NCBI RefSeq assembly: GCF_000143415.4
Contig: NW_003314266.1
Coordinates: forward strand, 580,463 to 644,462
Direction: 5' to 3'
Length of the DNA stretch: 64,000 bases
DNA from: Selaginella moellendorffii
Lineage: Eukaryota > Plantae > Lycopodiophyta
The first letter of the stretch is position 1; the number at the start of each line of letters is the position of its first letter. Positions 19,534 to 23,036 of the stretch are shown here, piece after piece. The position numbers were made by a program, and so were the translations under genes. Below the pieces are notes generated by a model that was given only the letters and a program-made list of their open reading frames with translations, did no database searches and was not told the DNA's origin.

Positions 19534-20901
19534 ATGGTTCGCGAGCGCGGGCGCGTGCGCCCTCAATCGATCACGCTCCAGTTCCACGCCGCCGCTCGAT
19601 GCCGCGCCGGCCAGCTCGCGATCCAGATCGAGGGAAGCGACATCCAATGCACGATGGACATGCTGTTGAGCTGCAAGCTCTTGCTGCGGCGATACCATGA
19701 CGGCGAGCAGCTCCTGGACTTGGATCTCCCGGGGGGAGCCAAGACATTCCACACCATCCAGAGGTACGTCCATGGCGATGCCATCACGCTCACGGTCGAG
19801 GCCGCCCTCGACCTCTACCTGGCGCTCCAGATCCTCGAGTGCGTCCTCCCGTTGCGCTCCCACTGCCGCGATTTCCTGCGGTCCACCGTCCTCGTCTCGT
19901 GGAAGACGATCGTGCGGGCGCTGCTTCTCATCGACTCACCCAGCGGCCGCTTGGATTGGTTCGTGGCCGAGTGCCGCTGCAAGCTCGTCGTGTTTCTCGA
20001 GAGCCTGGGCGTAGCCGAAATCGAGGACTGCCTTCGCATGAAGTTTATGAATCTCAGCCAGCCCCAGGTCCTGCGAGTGATCAAGCTCTTGCGGCAGCCA
20101 AGCGAGGGAGCTCGCAAGGCTCTCGCTCTCAACGAGAATCTCATGGAAGCTCTGGCCAGGATCTACCACCGCATTGGAACAAGGCCACGCCCAAACAAGG
20201 CGCAGCTCTTGCATCTCCTGGGCGATCTCATGCAGCATCCCCACCCCCGGCTCTACCACAGCCAAGGAGGCGAGGCTGAAAACTTCGCGGCCTTCCTCGC
20301 GGTGGCTCTCGCTCCACTGCGCGAGGCTCCCAGCGAGCTCCTGGAGAAGTACTCGTTGGTCCTCTCCAGGCTGCGGGCCTGGGAGATGGCGCGGCTGGAT
20401 CCACACTGTGTTCTCGCGATGGTGGCGCCGTGGAACGAGCTGGAGAGGTCCACGGCCCAGGCGGGCAGAGTCTTCGCGGCCGTGGAAAGGTATGTTGGTC
20501 ATGTCCTCGAGCAGGATGCCAGGGGCCACGGCCGGGACGAGCATTTCAAGAAGGTGGCAAGCTTCGTTGCCTTTGTTGCATCATCCAGTGTGGACGACTC
20601 TCACAGCAGCTTCGTGAGCGATCGTAAGAAAAAGCCAGCCACGGCCGCGACTCCAAAACCCTGCAAGCGCAAGCTGGACCTTGGATCATCCAGTGTGGAC
20701 GACTCTCACAGCAGCTCCGTGAGTGATCGTAAGAAAAAGCCAGTCGTGGCCGCCGCGACTCGAAATCCTGGCAAGCGCAAGCTGGGCCTCGAAGTTATAT
20801 CGATCAGTAGCGACAGCGGCAACGATTCGGAGGGTCACACCATCGCCAGGTTCAAACCCAGACCTCGTAGAAGTCTCAGAAGGAAGTCCAAAGCAATTTG
20901 A
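19534..20901 (+). CDS. Intronless, highly diverged BTB/NPH3 (NRL)-like protein with a basic repetitive C-terminus
   Basis: DLPGGAKTFHTIQRYVHGDAITLTVEAALDLYLALQILEC resembles NRL BTB DFPGGAEAFELxAKFCYG..LxCAAEYLEM; RVFAAVERY resembles the NPH3 LYRAIDIY motif; GC-rich ORF; start could be 19453. Confidence 0.6.
   Translation: MVRERGRVRPQSITLQFHAAARCRAGQLAIQIEGSDIQCTMDMLLSCKLLLRRYHDGEQLLDLDLPGGAKTFHTIQRYVHGDAITLTVEAALDLYLALQILECVLPLRSHCRDFLRSTVLVSWKTIVRALLLIDSPSGRLDWFVAECRCKLVVFLESLGVAEIEDCLRMKFMNLSQPQVLRVIKLLRQPSEGARKALALNENLMEALARIYHRIGTRPRPNKAQLLHLLGDLMQHPHPRLYHSQGGEAENFAAFLAVALAPLREAPSELLEKYSLVLSRLRAWEMARLDPHCVLAMVAPWNELERSTAQAGRVFAAVERYVGHVLEQDARGHGRDEHFKKVASFVAFVASSSVDDSHSSFVSDRKKKPATAATPKPCKRKLDLGSSSVDDSHSSSVSDRKKKPVVAAATRNPGKRKLGLEVISISSDSGNDSEGHTIARFKPRPRRSLRRKSKAI
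20581..20793 (+). repeat. Intragenic tandem duplication (105 + 108 nt)
   Basis: SSSVDDSHSSxVSDRKKKP..KRKLxL encoded twice (20581-20685, 20686-20793). Confidence 0.9.
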
Positions 20902-20977: not shown

Positions 20978-21638
20978 CTAGTCAATGTTAGTGCCCTCAA
21001 ACTGTTCTTCGATCTCTCCTCTCATAATCTTTAGCATCTCCTCCGAGATTGAGAAGCTCCTCGTGAGCACCTCGTCCAAGACTGGGGGATCGGTTGCGAA
21101 GAGGCCGCGATTGACATGCAAGAGCCCCGGACGCTGGCTGTTGAACGAGACGAAGGCTTGCGGCCCACATTGAGCTGGAAATGCACAAGCCCCCAGGGAA
21201 CACAAACAAATCTCCGCAAGTCAGGTACGTAGCATACAATTTGTAGTCCGTGTCCACGAATCCCACGTACATGAGATCGCCCTCGAAGAGGTAGAACGTC
21301 TCCGAGGCCCGGGGATGGACGTGCGGGGGATTCATCCCATGCTTGGCCGCGTAGTCTGCTCGCGCCGAGGACAAGCCCATGGTGTTCACCCCTGGAAACT
21401 CCTCCACGCTCGCGCGGGTGATCCACAATCCCAGCTCGTTGTTGGTGTTGCCGCGATTTGCGAGGCGTGAGAACTTGAAGTCGCTGGCGGTCGTGTTCTC
21501 GCTCGGCTTGCAGGGAAAGCCGTTGACTTGGATCTCCGAGTCAAGATCCGCAACGCAGTGATCCTGGAGTGGATCTGGATCGGCGGCATTGGCGAGAAGT
21601 AGCAGCAAGAGCAGCGATGCGGCGAAAAGAGAGATCAT
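20978..21638 (-). pseudogene. Germin-like protein pseudogene (two frameshifts)
   Basis: Signal peptide, DPDPLQDHCVAD, PPHVHPRASE; LVHFQLNVG and FNSQRPG..DPPVLDEVL lie in two other frames (breaks at ~21186 and ~21155). Confidence 0.88.
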
Positions 21639-21855
21639 CGTCACCAAGATTGTGGCGGAAGAAAGATTGCTCGAGTTCTGTGTGGAAGGCTCTTCTTTTT
21701 AAGTACGTCAAAGTAATGATTCCCTTACAACTAAGATGATCGCGCTTGCTTGTTTCGATGCGGATGATCTCTGTGGAACGCAAAGAGCATGAAACGAAAG
21801 TTGACCATTTGCTTGTGGTTGAAAGTCAAGTCAATTGCTAGGGCGAGCGTAAGCA

Positions 21856-22522
21856 ATGGCAATGGCGACCATGGCGCTATCCCCGTCGAGTTTCTGGGCT
21901 AGCGGGCGCTTGTCTTCTCGCAAGGCAGTCGTGCTCTCACGCCCAGTTCCAATTCACCGCAAGGTAAGCTGCTGTGCGTCTCCGGCGTCGTCATTTGAGC
22001 CGAGCAAACTGGGACTGGGAGCAAAACTCCCCGGCATTTCATCACAGGTCAGCCCTTTCTCTCGATTCTCTTGCATCCTTGCTAACATCCTCGCAGCTTG
22101 GAGCGCCTCCAGTCCCTCGCCTGGACGACCACCAGGACGTCACCGACGTGAGCTGCGATGCCACCACACTCAAGCCCTCCAAGAGCGCAAAGAGGACGCG
22201 AGCGCTCCAGGGCTGCCCTCAGAAGAGGGGCATTTGCCTGAGGGTGTCGGTGGTGACGCCCAAGAAGCCCAACTCGGCTCTCCGCAAGATTGCAAAGGTC
22301 CAGCTCTCCAACAAGAACGTCGTCAACGCCTACATCCCCGGTGAGGGCCACAATTTGCAAGAGCACTCTTGCGTGCTGGTTCGTGGTGGCAGGGTCAAGG
22401 ATTTGCCCGGCGTCAAGTACCACTGCGTGAGAGGGACGCTGGATCTCACCGGGGTCGCCAACCGCAAGCAGGGAAGATCAAAGTATGGCACGAAGAAACC
22501 CAAGGACGCTCCAAAGAAGTGA
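21856..22522 (+). CDS. rps12: Nuclear-encoded organellar ribosomal protein S12 (uS12) with N-terminal transit peptide; exons 21856-22047 and 22097-22522
   Basis: [41 protein letters not shown]; 49-nt GT-AG intron with branch point GCTAAC joins a Ser/Ala/Arg-rich leader in frame. Confidence 0.95.
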
Positions 22523-23036
22523 TACGCTTGCGTGGAAACTCGTTGACCAGGGCTGAAATCTGCCGTTGACCCTCGCGACGGTTTTTGTGAATTATCCAGA
22601 AATGGTCTTGTAACAAATTGAAAGTCCATTTGAAAGTTGGAATTTGACCACAGAATGTGTGAATTTTAAACCCATGCAACCATCCAGTCATTGGGAGTCA
22701 AAAGCCCATTTTTTTATAACGATCGATCCGAAAGATGAGATCAGATCGCCAAATCCAGCAAAAGGGTCTCCCCGGGATTTTGTTCTTGTCGTGCAATAGC
22801 AAAGCCCAATGCAGTGCGTTATAATCTAAAGCTCACTCGCTCAATCCCTCCATCGCGTTCTCTCTTTGTTTGTTTGCCTCTGTTACACAAAGAGACGAGC
22901 AAACATTCCCACTGTTAAGTGTGTGTAAGTGCCCTTCTCCATTCTCCCGCGGCCAATGGATTTGTTCGTACTGGGGTGGCGATGCGACCGTCCGTTTGAG
23001 CTTATCCGACGGATCTGCGCGTGTTGCATGCCGCCG

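What the first reader, a model, noticed from the sequence alone, without database searches (positions are those of the whole stretch)
21856..22522. Mitochondrial-type ribosomal protein S12 carrying a plastid-type transit peptide: possible cross-organelle ribosomal protein replacement
Seen: the S12 core has RTRAL, CLRVS, RKIAKV-LSN, YIPGEGH and HC-RG. Known: these are land-plant mitochondrial Rps12 states; plastid Rps12 reads KSPAL, CTRVY, RKVARVRLTSG, YIPGIGH and HIVRG. However, the C-terminus (RGTLD..GV..R.QGRSKYG.KKPK) and GCPQ-RG look plastid/bacterial. The separate first exon ([21 protein letters not shown]) is Ser/Ala-rich, uncharged at the start and without acidic residues in the first ~45 aa, like a chloroplast transit peptide. 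From memory, to be verified: S. moellendorffii mtDNA encodes no ribosomal proteins, and rps12 is degraded or lost in several Selaginella plastomes. Inference: a mitochondrion-derived gene was retargeted (or dual-targeted) to the plastid ribosome and either re-adapted or became chimeric at its C-terminus. For the decoding-centre protein this would be unusual.
Basis: partly seen in the sequence, partly recalled or inferred. Interest (0 to 1): 0.85.

Follow-up and report, generated by a model that had tools for sequence, protein, structure and literature searches.

The report
Mitochondrial-type uS12 with chloroplast-like leader
Selaginella moellendorffii expresses a second nuclear copy of its mitochondrial-type ribosomal protein S12 with a chloroplast-style import leader; because Selaginella chloroplast genomes have lost their own S12 gene, this copy probably supplies the chloroplast ribosome, but its location is untested.

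Summary
Window 21856-22522 is a two-exon gene with a 49-nt intron. It equals RefSeq model XP_002961665.2 (205 aa) and is transcribed and spliced in four studies.

The S12 core keeps 47 of 48 near-invariant columns. It carries 9 of 13 states derived in land-plant mitochondrial S12 and 0 of 4 states derived in cyanobacterial/plastid S12. The best tree puts it at the base of the land-plant mitochondrial clade (98/86). AU tests on about 110 columns cannot formally reject other placements. The "plastid-like" C-terminus consists of ancestral states, so I see no chimera.

That copy has an arginine-rich leader, an intact PTLNQL start and a telo-box beside its ATG. The window copy differs on all counts:
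- no charged residue before position 18
- no telo-box
- a longer branch
- no PTxNQLIR start, which every other complete mitochondrial-type sequence I examined keeps

Papers report no ribosomal protein genes in the mitochondrial DNA and no rps12 in Selaginella plastomes.

I read it as a plastid replacement of mitochondrial origin (about 0.55). Localisation is untested, and I could not test for a plastid-derived nuclear rps12. This would be a new member of a known kind. The scan also flagged the same gene on the other haplotype (s1-433286).

The parts
21830..22670 (+). Transcribed region (mRNA of about 790 nt after splicing)
   Evidence: Spliced transcript contigs in 4 runs of 4 studies start at 21830-21946 and end at 22650-22674. 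Adapter remnants at 21830 and 22670 mark cDNA ends.
21856..22047 (+). Exon 1 coding part: 64-residue leader. It is Ser/Ala-rich, with no charged residue before R18 and no acidic residue before E48.
   Evidence: Translation, RefSeq model P0232, leader statistics.
22048..22096 (+). Phase-0 GT..AG intron of 49 nt
   Evidence: The same 49 nt are skipped in contigs of all four runs. The paralog LOC9649666 has a phase-0 intron at almost the same distance upstream of the conserved 'AL' (36 versus 37 codons).
22097..22192 (+). Start of exon 2: 32 residues standing where the universal PTxNQLIR..R N-terminal tail of S12 should be. The motif is absent and an acidic patch (DDHQDVTD) is present.
   Evidence: Translation. 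The rpsL_bact profile matches only from position 16. Three columns conserved in at least 98% of the other 48 rows (T, Q, R) are lost. The only other mitochondrial-type sequences that lack the tail are five truncated or fused models.
22193..22522 (+). S12 core (RTRAL ... KKPKDAPKK) and stop codon. The PNSA loop, GHNLQEHS and [10 protein letters not shown] are intact.
   Evidence: PF00164 and TIGR00981 matches. 47 of 48 columns that are at least 97% conserved are kept. Best PDB match is Arabidopsis uS12m 6xyw_Bk at 3.7e-51.
21648..21829 (.). Short divergent promoter shared with a germin-like (cupin) gene on the minus strand. It has no telo-box.
   Evidence: The nearest AAACCCT matches are at 20656 and 23205. 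The cupin ORF is at 20997-21647 on the minus strand.
21728..22524 (.). 797-bp run identical between the two haplotype scaffolds. It covers the promoter-proximal DNA, both exons and the intron.
   Evidence: Alignment of L122 against L123: flanks are 97.9% identical, and the run ends 2 bp after the stop codon.

Best explanation
The gene encodes a functional bacterial-type ribosomal protein uS12 that descends from the mitochondrial rps12 lineage.

Inferred history: mitochondrial rps12 moved to the nucleus in the Selaginella lineage. Two nuclear copies now exist, either by duplication or by two transfers. One copy (LOC9649666/LOC9646270) kept the canonical N-terminus and has an arginine-rich mitochondrial presequence. 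The other is the window gene.

Inferred role: the window copy acquired a chloroplast-type transit peptide encoded by its own first exon. It is imported into plastids and takes the uS12 position at the decoding centre of the plastid 30S subunit. There it replaces the plastome-encoded rps12 that Selaginella has lost.

Shown: gene structure, expression and splicing, an intact S12 core, mitochondrial-type character states, the existence of the second paralog, and the contrast between the two leaders and promoters.

Taken from papers: loss of rps12 from the plastome and of all ribosomal protein genes from the mtDNA.

Inferred only: plastid import and incorporation into the chlororibosome.
For: 1. 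The gene is real, expressed and spliced, and equals the RefSeq model.

2. The S12 core is intact: 47 of 48 near-invariant columns are kept. Between the two paralogs, core dN is 0.16 while dS is saturated (about 1.9), which indicates long-term purifying selection.

3. The core is of mitochondrial type:
- 9 of 13 land-plant-mitochondrial derived states are present, and 0 of 4 cyanobacterial/plastid derived states.
- The ML trees place it with land-plant mitochondrial-type S12 at 96/86 and 98/86 support. Cyanobacteria plus plastid rows form a separate clade at 99-100.
- Forcing it to join the land-plant plastid rows costs 18.9 lnL.

4. It shares with LOC9649666 a change seen in no other mitochondrial-type sequence I examined (E/D to V in 'N[KR]NVV'), and a phase-0 intron 36/37 codons upstream of the conserved 'AL'.

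5. The two leaders contrast:
- LOC9649666 has 5 Arg in its first 20 residues, the first at position 7. Eight other nuclear uS12m leaders also have their first Arg at positions 2-8.
- The window leader starts [13 protein letters not shown], has its first charged residue at 18, and has 6 Ser/Thr in the first 20.

6. A telo-box (AAACCCT) lies 10 bp upstream of the LOC9649666 ATG. None lies within 1.2 kb upstream or about 680 bp downstream of the window gene. PMC3212954 reports telo-boxes enriched in mitochondrial and cytosolic but not chloroplast ribosomal protein genes, including in S. moellendorffii.

7. There is a need for such a protein. rps12 is reported missing or pseudogenised in all 16 Selaginella plastomes compared, S. 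moellendorffii included (PMC7827865 Table 3), and in S. uncinata (PMC4174432). The mtDNA has no rps genes.

8. There is precedent in the same genus. A 2026 preprint infers that a uL33m paralog serves the plastid, and tentatively a uS15m paralog too (10.64898/2026.10.06.756942).

9. The branch is longer than the sister copy's (0.33 versus 0.20 on the core; 0.79 versus 0.32 with the N-terminal region). This fits a move into a new ribosome.
Against: - There is no localisation data, and no trained targeting predictor was available. The leader argument rests on simple composition rules.
- I could not establish whether S. moellendorffii also has a plastid-derived nuclear rps12. All three word-index searches were saturated by mitochondrial-type or bacterial S12. 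The representative search returned mostly bacterial proteins with mis-called starts.
- AU tests do not significantly reject the window copy grouping with cyanobacteria plus plastids (p 0.13 and 0.44) or with land-plant plastid rows (p 0.084).
- No ortholog from another Selaginella species was found, so co-occurrence with plastome rps12 loss across the genus is unknown.
- The 2026 preprint surveyed three Selaginella species for retargeted mitoribosomal paralogs. Its main text names uL33 and uS15, not uS12.
- Trans-spliced rps12 is often missed in plastome annotation. Mower et al. did check by BLAST.
- Both plastid and mitochondrial S12 conserve the PTxNQLIR tail, so its loss does not point to the plastid in particular.
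Confidence: 0.55

Rival explanations
1. It is a second mitochondrial uS12 isoform. Both nuclear copies would serve the mitoribosome as sub- or neo-functionalised paralogs. Plastid uS12 would come from a gene I did not see: a plastid-derived nuclear rps12 or a cryptic plastome gene.
For: The core is of mitochondrial type. Plant mitochondrial presequences are also Ser/Ala-rich and lack acidic residues. No localisation data exist. A third S12 gene was not excluded. The 2026 preprint does not list uS12 among the Selaginella retargetings in its main text.
Against: The leader has no charged residue in its first 17 positions, unlike all nine nuclear uS12m leaders compared. It has no telo-box, whereas LOC9649666 has one next to its ATG. 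This reading leaves the plastid ribosome without an identified uS12, although plastome rps12 is reported lost.
Confidence: 0.2
2. It is dual-targeted. The leader is an ambiguous targeting peptide that delivers the protein to both plastids and mitochondria, as reported for the nuclear RPS16 of mitochondrial origin in angiosperms.
For: This is the mechanism known for plastid rps16 replacement (cited as pathway 2 in PMC6486807). From my own knowledge, ambiguous leaders tend to be Ser-rich with few N-terminal arginines, as this one is.
Against: A dedicated mitochondrial-looking paralog is retained, and its core is invariant between the two haplotypes. That makes mitochondrial delivery of the window copy unnecessary.
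Confidence: 0.12
3. It is plastid-derived, or a mitochondrial/plastid chimera. The gene, or its 3' half, would descend from plastid rps12 by transfer to the nucleus or by gene conversion.
For: RGTLD and [18 protein letters not shown] read like plastid or bacterial S12. AU tests cannot formally reject a plastid position (p 0.084-0.44). Mosaic S12 genes may exist elsewhere, for example Zostera P0285.
Against: None of the 4 cyanobacterial/plastid-specific states is present: the window copy has K not R in CPQKRG, N not S in LSN, E not I in PGEGH, and K not R in KKPK. The 3 'plastid-like' C-terminal states are the bacterial consensus. Two of them also occur in Nephroselmis mitochondrial S12 and one in the paralog. 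Nucleotide identity to the paralog is even across the core, 0.70-0.80 after the first window.
Confidence: 0.03

Closest known systems
Nuclear RPS16 of mitochondrial origin replacing plastid rps16 (Medicago, Populus and others). The bS16, bL19 and bL21 cases are summarised in bioRxiv 10.64898/2026.10.06.756942.
   Same: The plastome gene is lost, and a nuclear paralog of the mitochondrial ribosomal protein is inferred or shown to serve the plastid ribosome.
   Different: Those cases have experimental or structural support, and RPS16 uses one dual-targeted product. Here there are two separate genes with different leaders, the protein is uS12 at the decoding centre, and localisation is untested.
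Selaginella uL33m paralog predicted to replace plastid uL33c, and the tentative uS15m case in lycophytes and hornworts (same preprint)
   Same: The genus, direction (mitochondrial type to plastid) and logic are the same: plastome loss plus a paralog with a plastid-type leader.
   Different: It is a different protein. The preprint's main text mentions uS12 only for apicomplexan plastid genomes. Its Table 2 is an image I could not read.
Ordinary nuclear-encoded mitochondrial uS12m after gene transfer (Rosaceae with a CPN60-like leader, Papaver, Geraniaceae, Silene, Zostera; S. moellendorffii LOC9649666)
   Same: It has the same mitochondrial-type core, an added leader exon, and an intron just upstream of the mitochondrion-derived part.
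   Different: All of those keep the PTxNQLIR start and have arginine within the first 2-8 residues. The window copy has neither.
Reverse replacements: plastid-derived uS13 and uL10 serving plant mitochondria, and the scan's own uL6 case in this genome (s1-355793)
   Same: A nuclear duplicate is retargeted across compartments by swapping its leader.
   Different: The direction is opposite.

Membership tests
Bacterial-type ribosomal protein uS12 (PF00164 / TIGR00981 rpsL_bact) | Profile match above the curated cut-off | tested here: met
   PF00164 scores 136.7 bits (cut-off 22.3). TIGR00981 scores 191.5 bits (cut-off 112.95).
Bacterial-type ribosomal protein uS12 (PF00164 / TIGR00981 rpsL_bact) | Decoding-centre elements: [11 protein letters not shown] loop, [19 protein letters not shown] | tested here: met
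   All three are present unchanged. 47 of 48 columns that are at least 97% conserved are kept.
Bacterial-type ribosomal protein uS12 (PF00164 / TIGR00981 rpsL_bact) | Conserved N-terminal tail PTxNQLIR..R | tested here: not met
   The profile aligns only from position 16. The conserved T, Q and R columns are lost. Among the mitochondrial-type sequences examined, only five truncated or fused models also lack the tail.
Land-plant mitochondrial-type uS12 lineage (by descent) | Derived character states of the lineage (RTRAL, CLRVS, IAKV, GVKYHC) | tested here: met
   9 of 13 derived states are present. The undoubted mitochondrial-type paralog has 7 of 13.
Land-plant mitochondrial-type uS12 lineage (by descent) | Phylogenetic placement inside or at the base of the clade, with alternatives rejected | tested here: inconclusive
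   ML placement has 96/86 and 98/86 support. AU tests do not reject a cyanobacterial/plastid position at 0.05 (p 0.13, 0.44, 0.084).
Plastid/cyanobacterial uS12 lineage (by descent) | Cyanobacterial/plastid-specific states (CPQRRG, LTSGFE, PGIGH, KRPK) | tested here: not met
   0 of 4 are present.
Cross-compartment ribosomal protein replacement (mitochondrial-origin protein in the plastid ribosome) | The original plastome gene is lost | not tested
   Taken from papers only: PMC7827865 Table 3, PMC4174432, PMC6486807, PMC6590440. I did not examine the plastome sequence.
Cross-compartment ribosomal protein replacement (mitochondrial-origin protein in the plastid ribosome) | A separate paralog remains for the compartment of origin | tested here: met
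   LOC9649666/LOC9646270 on other scaffolds. It has a mitochondrial-type leader and an intact core.
Cross-compartment ribosomal protein replacement (mitochondrial-origin protein in the plastid ribosome) | No nuclear copy of the original (plastid) type | tested here: inconclusive
   The searches were saturated, and only the top 120-150 hits are visible. None of those was a Selaginella plastid-type S12.
Cross-compartment ribosomal protein replacement (mitochondrial-origin protein in the plastid ribosome) | Import into plastids and presence in the plastid ribosome | not testable with these tools
   Only the leader composition and the promoter motif speak to this.

The most novel reading that the evidence does not exclude
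In Selaginella the plastid ribosome's decoding-centre protein uS12 is a retargeted descendant of mitochondrial rps12. This copy has discarded the otherwise universal PTxNQLIR N-terminal tail and has reverted at a few C-terminal positions to the bacterial/plastid state (RGTLD). That would make it the first uS12 cross-organelle replacement in plants, and a natural experiment on how much of uS12 a bacterial-type 30S subunit needs.
Probability: 0.5. Interest if true: 0.6.

Novelty: new member of a known kind. Interest (0 to 1): 0.5.

Why it matters
uS12 sits at the decoding centre and controls translational accuracy. It is plastome-encoded in nearly all land plants.

If a mitochondrial-lineage copy serves the Selaginella chlororibosome, even core decoding proteins are interchangeable between organelle ribosomes. 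It would also help explain how Selaginella tolerates its extreme plastome reduction: tRNAs are imported and many rpl/rps genes are lost.

The two paralogs have the same origin but different leaders, tails and promoters. That makes them a clean pair for import assays and for testing what the conserved S12 N-terminal tail does.

If the protein turns out to be mitochondrial, the finding is an ordinary gene duplicate.

Tried and rejected
- **Three word-index protein searches** (window exon 2; the LOC9649666 core; a 274-aa Rosa uS12m chosen to shift the length window above bacterial S12). The aim was to find orthologs in other Selaginella species and any plastid-type nuclear S12.
- **Exhaustive representative search with a cyanobacterial S12.** The long hits were mostly bacterial proteins with mis-called upstream starts. 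P0423 is a plastid-like S12 on a 138-kb IMG contig, not Selaginella.
- **AU topology tests** lacked power on 109-126 columns. I therefore relied on polarised character counts.
- **Chimera hypothesis rejected.** There are no plastid-specific states, and nucleotide identity to the paralog is even along the core.
- **Allelic comparison for selection was uninformative.** The gene is identical in both haplotypes, synonymous and intron sites included.
- **The scan's own notes** hold no record of another S12 gene in this genome. That proves nothing.
- **Smith 2009** (S. moellendorffii plastome paper) is not in the library.
- **No targeting predictor** such as TargetP or DeepLoc was available.

Full report
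**What is there**

Window 21856-22522 (+ strand) holds a two-exon gene:
- Exon 1: 21856-22047, 64 codons.
- Intron: 22048-22096, 49 nt, GT..AG, phase 0.
- Exon 2: 22097-22522, 141 codons plus stop.

The spliced product equals P0232. This is RefSeq XP_002961665.2 / XP_002964733.2, 'uncharacterized protein LOC9658441 / LOC9658251', Selaginella moellendorffii, 205 aa.

The window lies on scaffold GL377566.1 of GCA_000143415.2. The other haplotype scaffold, GL377570.1, carries the same gene.

Transcript contigs from four runs of four studies cover about 21830-22670 and all skip exactly the 49-nt intron, so the gene is transcribed and spliced as modelled. Contig depth cannot be used to rank expression.

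**It is an intact S12**

Exon 2 matches PF00164 (3e-40) and TIGR00981 rpsL_bact (3.8e-57, profile positions 16-123 of 124). The best solved structure by sequence is Arabidopsis mitoribosomal uS12m (6xyw_Bk, 3.7e-51). Spinach chloroplast uS12c follows at 2.7e-48.

In a 109-column core alignment of 75 sequences, 48 columns are at least 97% conserved. The window protein keeps 47 of them, including [19 protein letters not shown] and [11 protein letters not shown].

**Origin of the core**

I collected four groups of sequences:
- Land-plant mitochondrial and nuclear mitochondrial-type S12, plus Nephroselmis and fungal mitochondrial S12.
- Named bacteria.
- 14 cyanobacterial S12, found with a pattern for the plastid/cyanobacterial motif TSGFE[IV]TAYIPGIGH.
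- Two angiosperm plastid S12: exon 2 on a contaminant contig (L008), and Vicia P0380 with its pieces re-ordered and XX at the junction.

ML trees (LG+C20+F+G4) place the window protein with land-plant mitochondrial-type S12, at the base of that clade (96/86 with the N-terminal region included; 98/86 on the core only). Cyanobacteria and plastids form their own clade at 99-100.

The alignment is short and AU tests lack power:
- Window plus all cyanobacteria/plastids: p 0.13 and 0.44.
- Window plus the two land-plant plastid rows: 18.9 lnL worse, p 0.084.

I therefore polarised characters against the bacterial consensus:
- In 13 columns land-plant mitochondrial S12 has a derived state. The window has the mitochondrial state in 9, the ancestral state in 3 and another residue in 1.
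- In 4 columns cyanobacteria and plastids have a derived state. The window has it in none.
- The undoubted mitochondrial-type paralog scores 7 of 13 and 0 of 4.

The three ancestral states are T, L and V in RGTLD..GV. All three are the bacterial consensus. L and V also occur in Nephroselmis mitochondrial S12, and V occurs in the paralog. A chimera is not needed.

**The second paralog**

S. moellendorffii has another nuclear mitochondrial-type S12, on other scaffolds: LOC9649666 / LOC9646270 (P0010 / P0234, 242-243 aa).

The two cores are 82% identical in protein and 72% in DNA. dN is 0.16 and synonymous sites are saturated (dS about 1.9), so the split is old and both copies are constrained.

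Both copies share a V where the other mitochondrial-type sequences examined have E, D or, in a few rows, another residue ('N[KR]NVV'). Both also have a phase-0 intron 36 or 37 codons upstream of the conserved 'AL'. This fits duplication of an already nuclear gene. Two transfers from the same mitochondrial lineage are not excluded. The AU test does not reject the two as sisters (p 0.21).

**How the two copies differ**

| Feature | Window gene (P0232) | LOC9649666 (P0010) |
|---|---|---|
| Leader start | [17 protein letters not shown] | MGSWQARRRALGFAFSGRAR |
| First charged residue | R18 | R7 |
| First 20 residues | 1 Arg, 6 Ser/Thr | 5 Arg |
| First acidic residue | E48 | position 34 |
| N-terminal tail PTxNQLIR..R | absent; an unrelated stretch with an acidic patch stands in its place | PTLNQLVR intact |
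| Telo-box (AAACCCT) | none within 1.2 kb upstream or about 680 bp downstream | 10 bp upstream of the ATG |
| End branch, core only | 0.33 | 0.20 |
| End branch, with N-terminal region | 0.79 | 0.32 |
| Allelic differences between haplotypes | none, in a 797-bp identical run | 8 residue changes, all in the leader |

- **Leaders.** Eight other nuclear uS12m leaders (Rosa, Papaver, California, Silene, Rhododendron, Zostera, Ambispora and one unnamed) all have their first Arg at positions 2-8.
- **N-terminal tail.** Every other complete mitochondrial-type sequence keeps this tail. The only others that lack it are five truncated or fused models.
- **Telo-box.** PMC3212954 reports telo-boxes near the start codon as enriched in mitochondrial and cytosolic, but not chloroplast, ribosomal protein genes, including in this species.

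**Organelle genomes (from papers, not tested here)**

The S. moellendorffii mtDNA has no rpl or rps genes (PMC5654404).

For plastome rps12:
- It is among the genes 'entirely absent or degenerated' in S. uncinata (PMC4174432).
- It is scored missing or pseudogene in all 16 Selaginella plastomes compared, S. moellendorffii included (PMC7827865 Table 3).
- Loss of its intron is attributed to loss of the gene, after BLAST validation (PMC6590440).

**Interpretation**

From general knowledge, no ribosome is known to work without uS12. If so, the Selaginella plastid must import one.

Two nuclear genes of mitochondrial type are in hand. One looks mitochondrial in leader and promoter. The other looks plastidial in leader and promoter and has evolved faster. 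The simplest reading is that the window gene supplies plastid uS12. I put this at 0.55, with a further 0.12 on dual targeting.

The main weaknesses are:
- There are no localisation data and no trained predictor was available.
- I could not determine whether a plastid-derived nuclear rps12 also exists. All three word-index searches were saturated, and the exhaustive representative search gave mostly bacterial proteins with mis-called starts.
- No ortholog from another Selaginella species turned up.

**Novelty**

Replacement of organelle ribosomal proteins by paralogs from the other compartment is established for bS16, bL19, bL21, uS13, uL10 and others. A 2026 preprint (10.64898/2026.10.06.756942) already infers a uL33m paralog in Selaginella plastids, and tentatively uS15m. 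Its main text mentions uS12 only for apicomplexan plastid genomes. Its Table 2 and supplements were not readable.

I found no paper describing this Selaginella uS12 gene pair. If the localisation holds, this is a new member of a known kind. Its added interest is that uS12 is a decoding-centre protein and this copy has lost the conserved N-terminal tail.

The scan's first stage flagged the same gene on the other haplotype scaffold (s1-433286). That is the same DNA, not independent support.

Noticed in passing
P0285 (Zostera marina nuclear 'ribosomal protein S12, mitochondrial') and P0295 (Logan transcript): Both have a mitochondrial-type N part (CLRVSTRT / CLRVSTVS) and C part (KFHCIRGVKDLLG). 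Their middle reads like plastid or bacterial S12 (RLTSGFEVTAYIPGIGH / RLTNGFEVTSYIPGVGH). They pair at 98/97 in the tree. They may be mitochondrial/plastid mosaics. PMC5435185 describes the Zostera gene only as a transferred rps12 with about 75% similarity.
   Followed up: partly
L001:2985-2991 (S. moellendorffii GL377631.1, upstream of LOC9649666): A telo-box (AAACCCT, minus strand) lies 10 bp upstream of the ATG of the mitochondrial-looking S12 paralog, in a 72-bp divergent promoter shared with a P4-ATPase gene.
   Followed up: partly
window 21728-22524: The S12 gene sits in a 797-bp run identical between the two haplotype scaffolds. Flanks are 97.9% identical. The run ends 2 bp after the stop codon, where indels begin. 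Synonymous and intron sites are identical too, so protein-level selection alone does not explain it.
   Followed up: partly
window 20997-21647 (- strand): A germin-like cupin gene (PF00190) is transcribed divergently. Its start lies about 200 bp from the S12 ATG.
   Followed up: no
L008 (NZ_LFJJ01000417.1, 'Candidatus Burkholderia verschuerenii UZHbot4', 1113 bp): This contig in a bacterial leaf-nodule symbiont assembly encodes angiosperm plastid rps12 exon 2. It is most likely host plastid contamination.
   Followed up: no
P0140-P0168 (Rosa, Fragaria, Rubus, Argentina): Rosaceae nuclear uS12m genes carry a CPN60-like N-terminal leader, and many are named 'chaperonin CPN60-like 2, mitochondrial' in RefSeq. 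This is leader capture by exon shuffling, and the names are misleading.
   Followed up: no
P0380 (Vicia sativa plastid S12, AMM06270.1): The deposited protein is circularly mis-joined: exons 2-3 come first, then exon 1 reading on into the intron. This is a typical annotation error for the trans-spliced rps12 gene.
   Followed up: no
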